Shown here piece by piece: positions 9,312 through 55,114 of a stretch of 64,000 bases of DNA. Within the stretch, counting starts at the first letter, position 1, and the number at the start of each line of letters is the position of its first letter. The stretch is from positions 186,001-250,000 of IMG/VR virus record IMGVR_UViG_3300040801_002079, one strand, 5' to 3'. Position numbers and translations under genes: made by a program. A model generated the notes under the pieces. That model was not told where the DNA came from. It worked only from the letters and a program-made list of their open reading frames with translations, and made no database searches.

Positions 9312-9812
9312 TTAATCGGTTTCTTTATGTTCTAGAACCCTATCATCAGTGGGTTCTTCATCTTGATCAAAGGCAAGACCTTTCTCTATCAGCTTTAACA
9401 CATCATCGTGTGTGCCAATAATAAGGTTGTTTGTTTGCTTTCCACCCTTGCCCAAAGCTTTCTCTTTTTGCTTAAGGGTGTCGATGTGCTGTTTTAGTAC
9501 ACGGCGCTTTTCAGATGCGGATAGCGCGGTATTTAATATTTGACCAGCAACCTCTGCGAGGCGTGATCGTTTGCTTGGATCAGCGTCATCAATTTCATCG
9601 ACCAGATACTCGTATAGTTCCATTGCCTTATCATGAACATTAAGGAAATCATCTTCAATTTCGATATCCTTTTCATCATAATCATCATGGTCTTTCGGTT
9701 CACTTACTACACGAGTTTTTTCAATTTCAGTGGTCCCGGACGGGACACCAAGAATATTTTCAAACGAATGCTCAATAGTCTCGGTAACCTTTTCAACTTT
9801 TCGCTCAGTCAT
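9312..9812 (-). CDS. terminase small subunit (gp16-like)
   Basis: RLAEVAGQIL and TNNLIIGTHDDVLK resemble T4-like gp16; late promoter upstream. Confidence 0.7.
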   Translation of the reverse strand: MTERKVEKVTETIEHSFENILGVPSGTTEIEKTRVVSEPKDHDDYDEKDIEIEDDFLNVHDKAMELYEYLVDEIDDADPSKRSRLAEVAGQILNTALSASEKRRVLKQHIDTLKQKEKALGKGGKQTNNLIIGTHDDVLKLIEKGLAFDQDEEPTDDRVLEHKETD

Positions 9813-31848: not shown

Positions 31849-31874
31849 GAAGGCCCGGAGTTCCGGGCCTTTTT
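31849..31874 (+). terminator. intrinsic terminator
   Basis: AAGGCCCGGA-GT-TCCGGGCCTTTTT. Confidence 0.8.
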
Positions 31875-33905: not shown

Positions 33906-34685
33906 TTAACTATTACGCCGCCGCAATATCTTAATATTACGATCTTTCAACTTCTTTGACAAATACGCTGATCCCACTCTATCCTGTCCCTTGGATATAT
34001 TAAAATGTCTTAAGGTTTTACTAACAGACCCATTAGTATTAAAAACCTCAATAATTTGGTCCATATTGTCATCAATCCATTTATAATGTGGTGCCCTATA
34101 ATACATCCTGCATTTTTTACTACAAAACCTATGCTTGCCATAAGTAGTAAAAGATTCACCACAAAACTGACAATCTTTAGTTACAGCACACTTTTCCTTT
34201 TTATAGGTTATCTCCCTTATAGCATTATTAAAACTAGCGGAACAACTTGCATTACAAAATTGATTCAATCTTTTCTCATATGGTAACTCACTATTGCACT
34301 GGGTGCACCGCTTCGGGTTATTTTCATATTCCTCTCGTATGAGTTTAGCCTTTGCATAAGCCCCGTTGCGTCCTCGTTGAGCGTAGTCATCACTGGACGT
34401 TAAATCATTTACATGATCCCATCCACCACTTCCTCCGTTCTTAATATTATATGAATCTGGATCACCGGGATCAACCAATTCAAATTCCATTAAAAACATG
34501 TCTTCCGGGTTATCAAACACAGCTAAAATTTCTTTCTCAAAATTCTCAATTCCGTATTTTTTAATGGCTCTTTTTAAAACCTTACCTGAACCCATATACC
34601 CATCATCTAAATTAACGGTCTTATGGCAACCTATATAAAACCTGCCGTTAACTTTATTCATTATCTTGTAAACTATAAAATGCAT
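33906..34685 (-). mobile_element. GIY-YIG (Seg-like) homing endonuclease
   Basis: [28 protein letters not shown]; start at MHFIVY after CATAAATA. Confidence 0.85.
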
Positions 34686-38163: not shown

Positions 38164-38251
38164 TGGTGGGACCGGCAGGATTCGAACCTGCAATGGGATT
38201 TCTCCGCCTGATTAAGAGTCAGGTACCTTCAGCCAATTCGGTCACGATCCC
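38164..38251 (-). tRNA. tRNA-Lys(CTT) with long variable arm
   Basis: loop CTCTTAA, 15-nt variable region, CCA. Confidence 0.85.
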
Positions 38252-39887: not shown

Positions 39888-39975
39888 TGGTGGGACCGGC
39901 AGGATTCGAACCTGCAACGGGATTTCTCCTCCGGATTAAAAGTCCGGTACCTTCAGCCAATTCGGTCACGATCCC
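39888..39975 (-). tRNA. tRNA-Lys(TTT) with long variable arm
   Basis: near-identical to 38164-38251, loop CTTTTAA. Confidence 0.85.
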
Positions 39976-42817: not shown

Positions 42818-42903
42818 TGGAGCGGGTACGCGGAATCGAACCGCAAGTCCTAACGGAATCGGGGTGGAAGCCCGACAGCGACACCAGATAGCTCAGTACC
42901 CGC
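42818..42903 (-). tRNA. tRNA-Gly(TCC) with long variable arm
   Basis: GCGGGTA acceptor, U73, loop CTTCCAC, V-arm TTCCGTTAGGACT. Confidence 0.8.
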
Positions 42904-45176: not shown

Positions 45177-45238
45177 TGGTGGAACTGACCGGACTCGAAC
45201 CGGCAACTTCGCGCACTCTACCGTTGAGCTACAGTCCC
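45177..45238 (-). ncRNA. anticodon-arm-less tRNA-Ala-like RNA
   Basis: acceptor with G3:U70 and A73-CCA, D arm, T arm; only 10 nt between D and T arms. Confidence 0.8.
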
Positions 45239-45570: not shown

Positions 45571-45663
45571 TGGTAGTAGGGGAGGGATTCGAACCCATCA
45601 CCAACCTCTAATCTGGAGTTCGAGATTATAAATCTCGTCGTGCTACCGTTACACCACCCTACC
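45571..45663 (-). tRNA. tRNA-Ile(TAT) with long variable arm
   Basis: loop TTTATAA, V-arm AACTCCAGATTAGAGGTT, CCA. Confidence 0.8.
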
Positions 45664-46100: not shown

Positions 46101-46188
46101 TCTTATAAATTTACCGGTTAATTTCGGTCCTCTGCGTTTAGCTGTGTCATGGCATCCTCCTATGCATTGGTGACATATATTGATAATT

Positions 46189-46266
46189 TGGAGCCGTCAC
46201 TGTGGAATCAAACCCAGTTGGTCGGACTTACGAGGCCCGTGCATCAATCGGCAATGCTTTGACGGC
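46189..46266 (-). tRNA. tRNA-Thr(CGT), divergent
   Basis: loop CTCGTAA; T loop TTTGATT with bulged T stem. Confidence 0.7.
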
Positions 46267-46268
46267 AT

Positions 46269-46513
46269 AAAAAAATGGCTGCTCCCGTAAGAACAGCCAT
46301 TCGATAATAAAGAAAGGTAAACCTCCCACCACAACATAGGGAGCCTTTTGTGGAAATTCTCAGCGCCTCCACCTGTGAGCAAAGCTCTTAGGGTTCGTCC
46401 TTGAGACTCAGGCCGTTCGCTAAAACGTTTTAACCTATGTGCCCATAGGTTCCATCATCTTGCGACATTTACCTTTCAAACACAATACTACACTACATAG
46501 TATTGAATGTCAA
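46269..46513 (-). ncRNA. promoter + structured RNA + terminator unit
   Basis: TTGACA-N17-TAGTAT; closing stem AAAGGTAAA/TTTACCTTT; terminator GGCTGTTC..GAGCAGCC-A-T7. Confidence 0.6.
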
Positions 46514-46675: not shown

Positions 46676-47283
46676 ATTTTCTTACAATTCTCAAAATGCC
46701 ACCTAGTCATTCCATTTTGTACACCACGCAATCCACAATGGGGGCAAGTTACATATATCTTTTCTTTCAACTTTAATGATTCGCTAATTTTATTTATATG
46801 TTCTAGTGTTTTTGGTTTCGAAGCAGCTTTTGATGCATGGGACTTTTGTGCTAAAGGGTCGCGCCTAGACCAGTGATTCTTCGACATTAGGTGGCGAGTT
46901 TTATCTGATACTGGTGGTCGCTTTAACGCTGCTTGCCGAATCTTATTCTTTGTTTCAAAATTATGGGATTTACCACTAAATGCACCAATAATTCCGGGAT
47001 TACCTCCACTTCCGCCAACTTTTAAATTATAACATAACGGGCTATTAACTACCGATTCATTAACCAAGCTTCGCTCAATATAAAACATCTCTTCCTTAGT
47101 ATCAACCACGGCTAAAATTTCTTTCTCAAAATTCTCAATTCCATATTTTTTAATGGCTCGTTTCAAAACCTTGCCCGAACCCATATACCCATCATTTAAA
47201 TCAACGGTCTTATGGCAACCTATATAAAACCTACCGTTGATTTTATTTGTTATCTTATAAACAATGTATTTAATGTCTATCAT
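46666..47283 (-). mobile_element. GIY-YIG (Seg-like) homing endonuclease with NUMOD3-like repeats
   Basis: [17 protein letters not shown]; N-terminus near-identical to 33906-34685; TATAAATA upstream. Confidence 0.85.
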
Positions 47284-51107: not shown

Positions 51108-51219
51108 CTATTTATGATATTACAAATAAGTATGGAAGTCAAGTTGACAATGGCAGTTGCCGCATTGCCTTCCGTCCCCGACACCTGTTCACACACTGCC
51201 ATGCATTATGCGGTGCCTC

Positions 51220-51292
51220 ACACCCCGACAGGAGTCGAACCTGCAACCGAGAGCTACTATGCCCCCAACTCTGCCGTTGAGTTTACGGAGTA
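51220..51292 (-). pseudogene. tRNA-like element with aberrant anticodon loop, no CCA
   Basis: acceptor TACTCCG/CGGGGTG, D and T arms, 6- or 8-nt loop around ATAGTA. Confidence 0.6.
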
Positions 51293-51301
51293 TTTCTAAT
51301 T

Positions 51302-52021: not shown

Positions 52022-52097
52022 TGGTGCATCTGGTTGGGCTTGAACCAACGGCCTCCTGCATGTCACGCAAGCGCTCTCCCAACTGAGCTACAGATGC
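52022..52097 (-). tRNA. tRNA-Val(GAC)
   Basis: loop GTGACAT, CCA. Confidence 0.92.
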
Positions 52098-52100
52098 ATA

Positions 52101-52195
52101 TGTCCATATTTTGATCCAACACTTTTTCAGAAGGACCGCGCTACCAGTTTAGCTACCAGCTTTCGCTGAACAGGACTCGAACCTGCATATGGACA
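52101..52195 (-). ncRNA. circularly permuted tRNA-like (YrlA-like) RNA
   Basis: terminal stem TGTCCATAT/ATATGGACA enclosing T arm, GAAA-closed acceptor, D arm. Confidence 0.7.
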
Positions 52196-53212: not shown

Positions 53213-53857
53213 ATGAAACTCAAAGACCTATTAACCGAAACACCGCTGCCACCAGATTGGGATAAAGATAAATTCAAATCATCTACCCCGTTTGCGCAAC
53301 GTGTTCGCTATGCTAAAGAACGTGCAAAACAAATCGGTGTCGGTTCAGCCCGTATTGCATTTGAGGTTGAATACGAAGGCCGTCCTACTATTTTAAAAAT
53401 AGCCAAGAACAAAAAAGGGATTGCACAAAATGAATATGAATCACAAATGTTCAATGATTACTACCTGCGTAGTCTTGAAATAACCATTCCAATAATTGAC
53501 CATGATGAAGAAAATGATCCTCCGACATGGATTCATATGGAAAAGGCTGAAAAAATGAAGCCTACTCAATTTAAAAAATTCTTTAACGGTATGGACCCCC
53601 ACGAAGTCCTAGATGCCGTAACATACTTAACAGGTAAAACCCGACAATTTAATCGTCCTAGTCAAGAAACCATTGACAAATACAATGAATTATTCGAAAC
53701 AAACGAGTATATTAATAGTCTCGTAGACTTAACTGGCAATTATGATATCGAAGCCGGGGATTTTGCCCGTTTAGCAAACTGGGGAATCTATAAAGGAAAC
53801 CCCGTTATTATCGACATCGGTGGTAGTAGTGAAGTTATTAAACTTTACTATATGTAA
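53213..53857 (+). CDS. protein-kinase-like protein with head-targeting leader
   Basis: IGVGSARIAF, ILKIA, QNEYE, MEKA, D...NWG, IIDIG; MKLKDLLTE after GATAAATA. Confidence 0.75.
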   Translation: MKLKDLLTETPLPPDWDKDKFKSSTPFAQRVRYAKERAKQIGVGSARIAFEVEYEGRPTILKIAKNKKGIAQNEYESQMFNDYYLRSLEITIPIIDHDEENDPPTWIHMEKAEKMKPTQFKKFFNGMDPHEVLDAVTYLTGKTRQFNRPSQETIDKYNELFETNEYINSLVDLTGNYDIEAGDFARLANWGIYKGNPVIIDIGGSSEVIKLYYM

Positions 53858-54092: not shown

Positions 54093-54181
54093 TGGTGGAG
54101 GTGGAAGGATTCGAACCTACTCAGCCGCTAAGGGCAACGGGTTTACAGCCCGTCCCAGATCACCGTCTCTGGAGCACCTCC
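54093..54181 (-). tRNA. tRNA-Tyr(GTA)
   Basis: loop CTGTAAA, V-arm, CCA. Confidence 0.92.
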
Positions 54182-54189
54182 TTTAATTT

Positions 54190-54266
54190 TGGCGGAACAG
54201 AAGGGCCTCGAACCCTCACCCCCTTCCGTGACAGGGAAGTACTCTACCTACTTAAGCTACTGCTCC
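54190..54266 (-). tRNA. tRNA-Asp(GTC)
   Basis: loop CTGTCAC, CCA. Confidence 0.95.
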
Positions 54267-54620
54267 ATAATTTCTCATATGTAATAACATATAAATTCCG
54301 AAAAATATATATCATTACATATAAAAAATAAAGGGGGCGGGGCTACACATCATTTCACCATCATCACCTACAACCCATGTCCGAAGACACAACGGCACCC
54401 TACCGTACACCCCCTCATAATTAAAGGGATTTTTCACGGGGGACACGTTCACAGACGCATTCAATCCCCATACCACAGCACTAGTGATACCACTCTCCTA
54501 GTGAGTTGCGCATTGGAAGCCGGGGCATTTCAGCGCTTGCGGTGATTCCAACACCTAATTGGATTTAACGTCATCATTGCTTTGGTATACAACTCTTTTA
54601 AATCCTGCCCTTTCAGGCAT

Positions 54621-54647
54621 AAAAAAAGCGGTCTTTTGGACCGCTTC
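54621..54647 (-). terminator. attenuator terminator at head of tRNA island
   Basis: AAGCGGTC-CAAAA-GACCGCTTTTTTT. Confidence 0.85.
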
Positions 54648-54679
54648 TTTGTTTAATCTTATTTCTTTTAGGATTTACA

Positions 54680-54820
54680 TTAGTTTTTTAATCCTACGCT
54701 AAACAAAGAAGCGTTCTTGGGTAACGGTTCCGCATTATCGGTAATATACAGACGCACGAGTCCGACTACGGAATGTGACCGCGTAAATTGTATCGAACTA
54801 TGTTTCCAAAATGTCTGCAT
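54680..54820 (-). CDS. 46-aa leader peptide sampling nearly all codons (not in ORF track)
   Basis: AGGA RBS 7 nt upstream; MQTFWKHSSIQFTRSHSVVGLVRLYITDNAEPLPKNASLFSVGLKN; overlaps antiterminator strand 54700-54713. Confidence 0.8.
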   Translation of the reverse strand: MQTFWKHSSIQFTRSHSVVGLVRLYITDNAEPLPKNASLFSVGLKN

Positions 54821-54907
54821 TTCTATTTCCTATTTCGTTTCCAAAAATTATGGGTCCGTCATTTCCGCTCCAATTGCGTGGTGAGGAACCCAGCTTCATT
54901 TTTAGCT

Positions 54908-54936
54908 AGTATATAACCTTATTTAGCATTTGTCAA
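54908..54936 (-). promoter_or_regulatory. near-consensus sigma70 promoter of tRNA island with embedded late-promoter motif
   Basis: TTGACA-N17-TATACT; GCTAAATA in spacer. Confidence 0.85.
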
Positions 54937-55114
54937 CACTTTTGTAAAAAAGTTTTTTTAGTTCCTTCCGTACCATCCAGTACCCATTAGTTTAAAGTTT
55001 GTTCCAGTGGGAAATTTCTTATGCATTGGCTTTCCACACTTTTCGCATTTTACTTCAGTATCCGCAGTTTTAACAATCTTTTCTTTTTCTTCTTTGCATT
55101 CATCACAAACAAAT

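What the first reader, a model, noticed from the sequence alone, without database searches (positions are those of the whole stretch)
54621..54936. Candidate 'pan-codon' attenuator: a leader peptide that samples the tRNA pool and gates the phage tRNA array
Seen (minus strand): a near-consensus promoter (54936-54908), an AGGA RBS, then a 46-codon ORF at 54820-54680: ATG CAG ACA TTT TGG AAA CAT AGT TCG ATA CAA TTT ACG CGG TCA CAT TCC GTA GTC GGA CTC GTG CGT CTG TAT ATT ACC GAT AAT GCG GAA CCG TTA CCC AAG AAC GCT TCT TTG TTT AGC GTA GGA TTA AAA AAC TAA. The first 39 codons contain 37 different codons and 19 amino acids. Codons 36-41 contain CGCTTCTTTGTTTA (54713-54700), perfectly complementary over 14 bp to TAAACAAAGAAGCG (54655-54642). 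That partner includes the outer part of the 5' arm of an intrinsic terminator (AAGCGGTC-CAAAA-GACCGC-T7), and the tRNA island begins downstream. Established: trp/his/thr-type attenuators use this geometry but with runs of one or a few amino acids. Inference: a ribosome that reads through occludes the antiterminator and transcription stops. Stalling at any upstream codon (tRNA starvation, or cleavage by host anticodon nucleases such as PrrC, RloC, VapC or PARIS AriB) frees it and switches on phage tRNA supply. That would make it a general tRNA-shortage sensor.
Basis: partly seen in the sequence, partly recalled or inferred. Interest (0 to 1): 0.97.

Follow-up and report, generated by a model that had tools for sequence, protein, structure and literature searches.

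The report
Translation-gated terminator before phage tRNAs
In this giant phage and five uncultured relatives, a small translated reading frame runs into a hairpin that competes with a transcription stop signal just upstream of a structured RNA and two or three tRNA genes, which looks like a switch tying their synthesis to ribosome activity; the 'every codon once' pattern that drew attention is not shared by the relatives.

Summary
The phage itself (316.8 kb IMG/VR contig) is invariant here in six assemblies. I found five diverged homologues of the whole unit (L059, L104-L107).

Shared by all six:
- a TTGACA-17-TAnnnT promoter;
- an orthologous ATG and an open frame of 46-91 codons;
- a 14-17 bp helix between the end of the ORF (R2) and the 5' arm of an invariant intrinsic terminator (R3);
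- the stop codon in the apical loop of an inner hairpin that has four unrelated sequences;
- two conformers within 0.7-2.9 kcal/mol.

Downstream lie a conserved ~225-nt structured RNA of no known family, then tRNA-Asp(-His)-Tyr. All indels keep the frame, and dN/dS is about 0.3 between the long forms, so the ORF is translated.

A ribosome-dependent conditional terminator is therefore the best reading (confidence 0.5). The 'pan-codon' idea fails its own test. Homologues have 23-28 distinct codons in their first 39, against 37 here, and a tRNA-Val region in the window also reaches 37 of 39. The switch gates one RNA and two tRNAs, not the island. This is a new variant of leader-ORF attenuation, shown only in silico.

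The parts
54908..54936 (-). Sigma-70-type promoter TTGACA-17-TATACT
   Evidence: 11/12. TTGACA, the 17-nt spacing and a TAnnnT -10 are kept in all six family members (TATACT, TACAAT, TATAAT, TATGAT; alignment A3).
54852..54891 (-). 5'-UTR hairpin GGGTTCC...GGACCC, an insertion specific to this phage
   Evidence: Fold. Absent from the homologues in alignment A3.
54826..54831 (-). Shine-Dalgarno-like AGGAAA before the start codon
   Evidence: Read. The homologues have (T/A)GGA(A/G)A at the same distance from the orthologous ATG.
54680..54820 (-). 46-codon ORF. The last 26 codons are homologous to the C-terminus of a 63-91 aa ORF family; the first 20 codons are unrelated
   Evidence: tblastn of the family proteins matches only VRL...KN (E = 8e-7 in a database of this region only). 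Alignments A4. JGI did not call it as a gene in any of five contigs.
54700..54713 (-). R2: 5' strand of the antiterminator, inside codons 36-41
   Evidence: The core CGCTTCTTTG is invariant in all six members, including third codon positions (GCT TCT TTG).
54670..54695 (-). Inner hairpin AGGATT / AATCCT with the stop codon TAA (54682-54680) in its apical loop
   Evidence: Folds. The homologues have hairpins of unrelated sequence at the same place, each with the stop codon in the loop.
54642..54655 (-). R3: 3' strand of the antiterminator, overlapping the terminator's 5' arm by AAGCG
54621..54646 (-). Intrinsic terminator: 8-bp stem, CAAAA loop, T7
   Evidence: -11.5 kcal/mol; -15.8 with the A/U extension. 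Sequence invariant in all members apart from one extra G-C pair in the relatives.
54323..54554 (-). Conserved structured RNA of about 225 nt, with no known family. It ends in a closing stem followed by a U-tract
   Evidence: z = -3.6. Consensus fold of 3 sequences: 57 pairs, 9 with compensatory changes. No Rfam match. Present in all members that reach this far.
54265..54334 (-). AT-rich hairpin with 29-nt arms abutting tRNA-Asp, specific to this phage
   Evidence: (I1). Absent from the relatives.
54093..54266 (-). tRNA-Asp(GTC) and tRNA-Tyr(GTA), the only tRNAs in this transcription unit
   Evidence: The relatives have Asp-His-Tyr. The next feature is a + strand gene at 53213-53857.

Best explanation
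The unit is a ribosome-dependent conditional terminator (a leader-ORF transcription attenuator) at the head of a small phage operon. That operon encodes a structured RNA of unknown function plus tRNA-Asp(-His)-Tyr.

Proposed sequence of events:
- A strong host-type promoter starts the transcript.
- A short ORF is translated into the 5' strand (R2) of a long hairpin and stops in that hairpin's apical loop.
- The 3' strand (R3) of the hairpin shares bases with the 5' arm of an intrinsic terminator.
- With no ribosome on the last ~15 codons, R2:R3 forms as soon as R3 is transcribed. The terminator then cannot form and RNA polymerase reads on into the structured RNA and the tRNAs.
- A ribosome translating or terminating there keeps R2 unavailable, so the terminator forms and the transcript ends at about 54621.

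Output of the downstream RNAs would thus rise when translation of the leader is slow, stalled or not started.

Shown: the anatomy, its conservation, the open frame and the energetic bistability.
Inferred: that ribosome position decides the outcome, the polarity of the switch, and any physiological signal.

The unusual codon diversity of this phage's ORF is a by-product. Its first 20 codons are a diverged, non-conserved stretch.
For: Homologues:
- Found by local blastn/nhmmer, a protein search, a profile search and contig look-ups.

Six-way conservation:
- promoter, orthologous ATG, R2, R3, terminator and downstream genes.

Translation:
- ORF lengths are 46, 63, 85, 86, 86 and 91 codons. Pairwise gap runs are multiples of 3 in 8 of 10 pairs.
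- dN/dS is 0.27-0.35 between L059 and L104/L105, with differences of 10, 8 and 23 at codon positions 1, 2 and 3.
- The ORF is called as a gene in the relatives.

RNA constraint:
- R2 is frozen at synonymous sites.
- There is one compensatory pair at the top of the outer helix, U-A to C-G.
- The inner hairpin exists in four unrelated sequences. Each is more stable than shuffles (5, 9, 3 and 0 of 200 shuffles fold as well).
- The stop codon is in the loop in all members.

Bistability, antiterminator versus terminator conformer in kcal/mol:
- window -25.3 / -24.6
- L059 -34.4 / -35.4
- L104 -39.9 / -37.5
- L106 -32.2 / -35.1

Kinetics and geometry:
- The nascent RNA folds into the antiterminator before the terminator's 3' arm exists, in all members tested.
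- The stop codon lies 33 nt before the terminator stem. That exceeds the 27-30 nt beyond which a terminating ribosome no longer masks a terminator (PMC4824070).
- No sigma-70-like promoter lies between the terminator and tRNA-Asp.
Against: - There are no expression data and the hosts are unknown.
- The core of the outer helix never varies, so covariation support for it is weak: 1 compensatory pair, and 146 of 500 shuffles do as well.
- A ribosome parked at the stop codon does not directly cover R2 (17-29 nt upstream) or R3 (22-27 nt downstream). The outcome therefore rests on kinetics or steric hindrance that I cannot compute.
- There is no run of regulatory codons and no conserved pause or anti-antiterminator hairpin. 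A local 5-bp R2 hairpin appears in only 3 of 5 distinct sequences.
- Purifying selection on the long forms suggests a working small protein rather than a mere leader.
- In this phage the ORF's codon usage is non-genic, and JGI did not call it as a gene.
- A second stem plus U-tract follows the structured RNA, so tRNA output may be limited there as well.
Confidence: 0.5

Rival explanations
1. It is an ordinary small phage gene with its own promoter and terminator. The R2:R3 hairpin would be a 3'-end stabiliser or a processing site (for example for RNase III) that separates the mRNA from the downstream RNA and tRNA precursor. The downstream genes would be expressed by constitutive leak-through. 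In this phage the gene would be a decayed remnant.
For: - The long forms are under purifying selection and carry internal repeats of an E-[KR]-x-x-G-[IY] type, so they look like a protein.
- The window's ORF keeps only the last 26 codons of the family.
- Its codon usage is non-genic.
- It is not called as a gene.
Against: - A stabiliser has no need to share bases with the terminator arm, nor to be isoenergetic with it in four different sequences.
- The short forms (46 and 63 codons, dN/dS 0.5-0.9) still keep an open frame from the orthologous ATG to a stop in the loop.
- If the ORF is translated, ribosomes must melt R2 whatever else the hairpin does.
Confidence: 0.22
2. It is a conditional terminator set by a trans-acting factor, with translation of the ORF incidental. 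Candidates are a phage or host RNA-binding protein, the small protein itself, a small RNA or a tRNA.
For: - Bistable terminator and antiterminator conformers are conserved.
- Blocks frozen at the nucleotide level lie inside the ORF (GTG CGY CTG, GAT, CCG). They could be binding sites.
Against: - No match to T-box, PyrR or any other Rfam leader.
- The antiterminator is a perfect helix with no tRNA-acceptor-binding bulge.
- Frame conservation through nine or more indels is not explained by this reading.
Confidence: 0.13
3. One reading: the leader was selected to contain nearly every codon once, so that shortage or cleavage of any tRNA stalls the ribosome and switches on phage tRNA supply.
For: - 37 of 39 distinct codons is the maximum among stop-free windows here and is frame-specific.
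- The attenuator geometry is conserved.
Against: - Homologues have 23-28 distinct codons in their first 39 and repeat codons freely.
- Their peptides are conserved rather than divergent.
- A non-coding tRNA-Val region reaches the same 37 of 39.
- A single regulatory codon gives only weak, hyperbolic control in attenuation models (PMC1183508).
- Only two tRNAs are downstream.
Confidence: 0.04
4. It is a stand-alone non-coding small RNA gene (promoter, about 280 nt, terminator) in which the ORF is fortuitous. It would resemble the ORF-less promoter / structured RNA / terminator module at 46513-46273.
For: - The transcript folds better than shuffles (z = -4.0).
- A second such module without an ORF sits in the same tRNA island.
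- The ORF has no protein homologue by direct search.
Against: - The ORF is conserved and in frame, with third-position excess, in the relatives.
- A small RNA would not mask its own terminator.
- The two modules share no sequence.
Confidence: 0.06

Closest known systems
Leader-peptide transcription attenuators of enterobacterial amino-acid and pheST operons (trp, his, leu, thr, ilv, pheA, pheST)
   Same: Promoter-proximal short ORF; an intrinsic terminator more than 20 nt past the stop codon; a mutually exclusive antiterminator whose 5' strand is reached by the translating ribosome; read-through when the ribosome lags behind.
   Different: No run of regulatory codons. No conserved 1:2 pause hairpin. 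The ORF is long (up to 91 codons) and partly conserved as a protein. The stop codon sits inside the antiterminator loop rather than before region 2. The regulated genes are a non-coding RNA and tRNAs, in a phage.
Translation-stress-sensing attenuators before resistance genes (B. subtilis bmrB-bmrCD and vmlR; streptococcal msrD leader; PMC9226507 and 10.1101/2021.11.29.470318 among the hits)
   Same: An upstream ORF without special codon runs plus terminator/antiterminator alternatives. Any slowing of the ribosome on the ORF raises read-through. This is the closest match to a general translation sensor.
   Different: Those respond to ribosome-targeting antibiotics and control ABC-F or efflux genes. 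Several need specific arrest peptides. Nothing here indicates an arrest motif.
pyrBI and rph-pyrE attenuation (coupling of ribosome and RNA polymerase; pyrBI is discussed in PMC4824070, rph-pyrE is from my own knowledge)
   Same: The 3' end of a translated ORF (a full-length gene in rph-pyrE) decides the fate of a terminator just downstream.
   Different: The polarity is opposite. There a closely following ribosome physically blocks the terminator hairpin and causes read-through, and there is no antiterminator helix.
T-box riboswitches
   Same: A leader with terminator and antiterminator alternatives that reports on tRNA status.
   Different: The Rfam T-box model does not match. There is no specifier loop and no acceptor-binding bulge. 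T-boxes need no ORF.
Phage T4 tRNA cluster with co-transcribed stable RNAs (species 1 and 2 / RNA C and D; from my own knowledge)
   Same: Structured RNAs of unknown function are transcribed together with phage tRNAs and presumably released by tRNA processing.
   Different: No sequence relation was tested or found, and no attenuator is known upstream of the T4 cluster.

Membership tests
Leader-peptide (ribosome-mediated) transcription attenuator | Short ORF with a ribosome-binding site close to the promoter, and evidence that it is translated | tested here: met
   ATG preceded by GGA(A/G)A in all six members. The frame is kept through many indels, and dN/dS is about 0.3 in the long forms. Translation is inferred from evolution, not observed.
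Leader-peptide (ribosome-mediated) transcription attenuator | Intrinsic terminator between the ORF and the regulated genes | tested here: met
   8-9 bp GC-rich stem plus T7, invariant in six members and 33 nt past the stop codon.
Leader-peptide (ribosome-mediated) transcription attenuator | Antiterminator pairing mutually exclusive with the terminator, with one strand within reach of the translating ribosome | tested here: met
   A 14-17 bp R2:R3 helix. R2 lies inside the ORF and R3 shares 5-7 nt with the terminator arm. The conformers are within 0.7-2.9 kcal/mol.
Leader-peptide (ribosome-mediated) transcription attenuator | Run of regulatory codons cognate to the regulated pathway | tested here: not met
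   No codon run. Asp/Asn/His/Tyr (NAY) codons make up 14-21%, against a 19.2% background.
Leader-peptide (ribosome-mediated) transcription attenuator | Pause or anti-antiterminator (1:2) hairpin that synchronises ribosome and polymerase | tested here: inconclusive
   A local 5-6 bp R2 hairpin appears in the window, L059 and L106, but not clearly in L104 or L107.
Leader-peptide (ribosome-mediated) transcription attenuator | Read-through depends on translation of the leader | not testable with these tools
   Needs reporter assays or in-vitro coupled assays.
   Distinct codons in the first 39 are 23, 23, 26, 27 and 28 in the homologues, against 37 here. The peptides are 55-70% identical.
T-box riboswitch | Match to the covariance model; specifier loop and T-box bulge in the antiterminator | tested here: not met
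   No Rfam hit at E <= 10 in 54200-55000. The antiterminator is an uninterrupted helix.
Stand-alone small RNA gene | No conserved ORF, and an efficient terminator of its own | tested here: not met
   The ORF is conserved in frame. The terminator is masked in the minimum-free-energy fold and in the nascent fold.
Any Rfam 15 family (for the leader and for the downstream structured RNA) | Score at or above the gathering threshold | tested here: not met
   Only tRNAs pass the threshold.

The most novel reading that the evidence does not exclude
A lineage of uncultured giant phages couples synthesis of a dedicated structured RNA and of the queuosine-family tRNAs (Asp, His, Tyr) to the performance of host ribosomes, through a leader-ORF attenuator. 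When translation falters (host shut-off, tRNA depletion or cleavage by a defence nuclease, ribosome shortage), the phage automatically makes more of these RNAs. This would be the first attenuator known to control tRNA genes, and a phage-borne sensor of translation capacity.
Probability: 0.22. Interest if true: 0.85.

Novelty: new variant of a known kind. Interest (0 to 1): 0.6.

Why it matters
Leader-ORF attenuation is textbook for amino-acid operons and has more recently been found before antibiotic-resistance genes. I found no report of it in front of tRNA genes or in a phage tRNA island; three literature searches gave none.

If the switch works as inferred, phage tRNA and non-coding RNA output is under feedback from translation itself. 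That bears on why phages carry tRNAs and how they cope with host shut-off or tRNA-targeting defences.

The unit is compact, about 320 nt. It uses a consensus sigma-70 promoter and a canonical terminator, so it can be tested directly in a laboratory strain.

The work also brings out a conserved 225-nt structured RNA with no known family, always placed between the switch and tRNA-Asp.

Tried and rejected
Searches that found nothing:
- DNA search of the 50,697 phage records with the region gave no match.
- Neighbouring proteins have only distant relatives, below 60% identity, without synteny.
- The 114-aa neighbour has no relatives at all.
- The 46-aa peptide has no homologue by direct search and no Pfam or PHROG family.
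- Six contigs of the same phage are 100% identical over the unit, so they give no variation.
- Pattern scans with the tRNA-Asp, the structured RNA core and the terminator found only the two IMG/VR contigs. They found nothing in metagenome contigs and one chance hit in genome contigs (L108).

Ideas rejected:
- tmRNA, T-box, riboswitch or a known small RNA: no ARAGORN or Rfam support.
- Paralogy with the promoter / RNA / terminator module at 46513-46273: no similarity.
- Regulatory codons matching the downstream tRNAs (Asp/His/Tyr/Asn): no enrichment.
- A type I toxin or membrane peptide: the peptide is not hydrophobic.
- A terminator that acts on one strand only, masked on the minus strand. I considered this but cannot separate it from the attenuator reading. 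The T7 tract on the minus strand argues that minus-strand termination is selected.

Full report
OBSERVATION. On the minus strand every listed element is present.
- The promoter TTGACA-17-TATACT (54936-54908) scores 11/12 and is the best match in 20 kb.
- AGGAAA lies at 54831-54826 and an ATG at 54820.
- The ORF has 46 codons and ends at TAA 54682-54680. It has 37 distinct codons in the first 39 and 38 of 46 overall.
- A perfect 14-nt complement joins 54713-54700 and 54655-54642, extending to 16 of 17.
- The terminator is AAGCGGTC-CAAAA-GACCGCTT-T7 (54646-54621).
- tRNA-Asp begins 354 nt further on, at 54266.

CHANCE. The 14-nt complement is far beyond chance: at most 1 of 3446 sampled positions in the window reaches 14.
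The codon diversity is extreme but less compelling.
- It is the maximum of 27,449 stop-free 39-triplet windows, and it is frame-specific (37 against 28 and 28).
- When stop codons are allowed, a second locus, 52024-52152 over tRNA-Val, reaches the same 37 of 39.
- Under uniform models the per-window probability is about 4e-5 (61 sense codons) to 9e-5 (random bases). One or two such windows in 64 kb of partly balanced, structured sequence is therefore not remarkable.
- The ORF's codon usage is that of non-coding frames: log-likelihood ratio -0.05 per codon, against 0.40 +/- 0.17 for pieces of real genes.

CONTEXT. The window is positions 186001-250000 of IMGVR_UViG_3300040801_002079, a 316.8 kb phage contig.
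- It carries 37 tRNA genes and a T4-type prohead protease domain.
- It has no close relative among deposited phages.
- Six assemblies of the same phage are identical over the whole unit.
- JGI called no gene at the 46-codon ORF in any of them.

HOMOLOGUES.
- A local blastn/nhmmer of 54936-54267 against all loci fetched for other reasons hit L059, a 22 kb contig from the same sample. It is about 70% identical over the second half of the ORF, the terminator and the region upstream of tRNA-Asp.
- In L059 the ORF has 85 codons and is an annotated gene.
- A protein search with it gave three more members and a profile search a fifth.
- Their contigs (L104, L105, L106, L107) carry the same unit.

CONSERVED ANATOMY. 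All six members share the following.
(i) TTGACA, a 17-nt spacer and a -10 that varies but keeps TAnnnT (TATACT, TACAAT, TATAAT, TATGAT).
(ii) An orthologous ATG preceded by GGA(A/G)A.
(iii) An open frame of 46, 63, 85, 86, 86 or 91 codons.
(iv) R2, with the invariant core CGCTTCTTTG, read as Ala-Ser-Leu. All three third positions are frozen.
(v) An inner hairpin between R2 and R3 that has four unrelated sequences: AGGAUU/AAUCCU, GGGUGA/UCACCC, GGUUAAG/CUUAACC and GUACUAAU/AUUAGUAC. Each is more stable than its shuffles (5, 9, 3 and 0 of 200 shuffles fold as well).
(vi) The stop codon in the apical loop of that hairpin, 17-29 nt after R2 and 22-27 nt before R3.
(vii) R3 overlapping the 5' arm of a terminator that is invariant apart from one extra G-C pair in the relatives.
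(viii) A conserved structured RNA, then tRNA-Asp, (His) Tyr.
In L059 and L107 a strong terminator precedes the promoter, so this is a transcription unit of its own.

IS THE ORF TRANSLATED? The evolutionary evidence says yes.
- Among the five relatives, pairwise gap runs are multiples of three in 8 of 10 pairs. The two exceptions are adjacent runs in a hypervariable linker.
- Between L059 and L104/L105, dN/dS is 0.27-0.35, with 10, 8 and 23 differences at codon positions 1, 2 and 3.
- The long forms contain short internal repeats, and one recent 18-nt duplication.
- The short form L106 evolves almost neutrally at the protein level (dN/dS 0.5-0.8) but keeps the frame.
- The window's ORF shares only its last 26 residues with the family. 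Its first 20 codons match no family protein in any frame. An in-frame TAG (54832-54830) lies just upstream of its ATG.
So the open frame from the conserved ATG to a stop in the loop is common to all members. The peptide is not.

CODON DIVERSITY IN THE RELATIVES. Distinct codons in the first 39 are 23, 23, 26, 27 and 28. The window-wide mean for stop-free stretches is 25.7. The high diversity here is best explained by the first 20 codons being a diverged stretch without codon bias.

THE RNA SWITCH.
- For the segment from R2 to the U-tract, the antiterminator and terminator conformers have these energies in kcal/mol: window -25.3 and -24.6; L059 -34.4 and -35.4; L104 -39.9 and -37.5; L106 -32.2 and -35.1.
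- L107 folds the same way.
- In every member tested, the transcript truncated before the terminator's 3' arm folds into the antiterminator. An untranslated transcript should therefore read through.
- Covariation in the outer helix is thin: 10 of 15 pairs never vary, and one pair changes U-A to C-G.
- The argument for the helix rests on three points. Both strands are invariant in a region that is otherwise about 70% identical. Synonymous sites in R2 are frozen. The inner hairpin has been re-invented four times.

WHAT IS GATED. The cargo is not 'the tRNA array'.
- Downstream come a structured RNA of about 225 nt (54554-54323) and then tRNA-Asp and tRNA-Tyr.
- The structured RNA has 9 of 57 predicted pairs with compensatory changes in three sequences. 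Its closing stem covaries (GAGGGGG/CCCCCUU against GAGGAAG/CUUCCUC) and is followed by a U-tract. It has no Rfam family.
- Next is a gene on the opposite strand, 53213-53857.
- No sigma-70-like promoter lies between the terminator and tRNA-Asp, so these RNAs seem to depend on read-through.
- Other tRNAs in the island have their own consensus promoters, for example 30725-30696, which ends 43 nt before tRNA-Val.

MECHANISM. My best reading, at confidence 0.5, is a ribosome-dependent conditional terminator.
- A ribosome on the last ~15 codons, or terminating in the loop, keeps R2 from pairing. R3 then forms the terminator.
- With no ribosome, or a ribosome held up earlier, R2:R3 forms first and polymerase continues.
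- The stop codon is 33 nt from the terminator stem. That is beyond the 27-30 nt within which a terminating ribosome masks a terminator (PMC4824070).
- Against this reading: a ribosome at the stop codon covers neither R2 nor R3 directly. There is no conserved pause hairpin. There is no regulatory codon run, so sensitivity to any single tRNA would be low (PMC1183508).
- The polarity of the switch and the physiological signal are inferences.

RIVALS.
- An ordinary small gene whose 3' hairpin stabilises or processes the RNA (0.22).
- A factor-controlled riboregulator in which translation is incidental (0.13).
- A stand-alone small RNA (0.06).

COMPARISON WITH KNOWN SYSTEMS.
- It works most like the leader-ORF attenuators. 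Among them it is closest to those that sense general translation stress without special codons (bmrB-bmrCD and vmlR; PMC9226507).
- It meets four structural criteria of the class. It fails the regulatory-codon criterion. The pause hairpin is uncertain.
- It differs in cargo (a non-coding RNA and tRNAs), in setting (a phage), in ORF length, and in having the stop codon inside the antiterminator loop.
- It is not a T-box.
- I rate it a new variant of a known kind.

Noticed in passing
window 54323-54554 (-); L059 about 9432-9651; L104 780-1001; L107 about 1097-1320: A conserved, GC-rich structured RNA of about 225 nt with no Rfam family. It always lies between the switch and tRNA-Asp. It has a 30-nt nearly invariant block (ATCACCGCAAGYGCTGAAATGCCCCGGCT) and a covarying closing stem followed by a U-tract.
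   Followed up: partly
window 46273-46513 (-): A second module inside the tRNA island: promoter TTGACA-17-TAGTAT, a GC-rich RNA of about 200 nt with no ORF whose ends pair, and a 13-bp terminator. The terminator has the same TTTTTTTATGCC tail as the focal one. No sequence similarity to the focal unit and no Rfam family.
   Followed up: partly
window 46185-46265 (-): A tRNA-like cloverleaf (7-bp acceptor stem, anticodon loop CUCGUAA, irregular T arm, ending TCCA) directly after that terminator. Neither ARAGORN nor the Rfam tRNA model called it.
   Followed up: partly
window 38164-38251, 39888-39975, 42818-42903, 45571-45663, 51219-51293 (-): Unusual tRNA calls: two 88-nt tRNA-Lys (CTT and TTT, 94% identical to each other), an 86-nt tRNA-Gly, a 93-nt tRNA-Ile(TAT), and a tRNA with a two-base 'anticodon'. 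In addition, 45180-45238 gives a 59-nt Rfam tRNA hit that ARAGORN missed.
   Followed up: no
window 34486-34676 and 47075-47265: A 191-nt direct repeat, 87% identical, 12.6 kb apart. Both copies lie inside long minus-strand ORFs.
   Followed up: no
window 54265-54334: A long AT-rich hairpin (29-nt arms, 79% complementary) abutting the 5' end of tRNA-Asp and absent from the relatives. It may be a processing site.
   Followed up: no
L059 9291-9355; L104, L105, L106 at the same place: The relatives carry about 57 nt, including a direct repeat (TATACCCT-N4-GGAATAAA, twice), between the terminator and the structured RNA. The window's phage lacks it and instead has a 40-nt hairpin inserted in the 5' UTR (54852-54891).
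   Followed up: no
L107 1617-1810: After tRNA-Tyr there are two more tRNA-like stretches that ARAGORN did not call. One is long enough to hold an insertion.
   Followed up: no
window 31850-31871 (-): A strong terminator (9-bp stem, 7 G-C pairs) directly after tRNA-Pro(GGG). Its tail, TTTTATGC, resembles those of the two terminators at 54621 and 46273.
   Followed up: no
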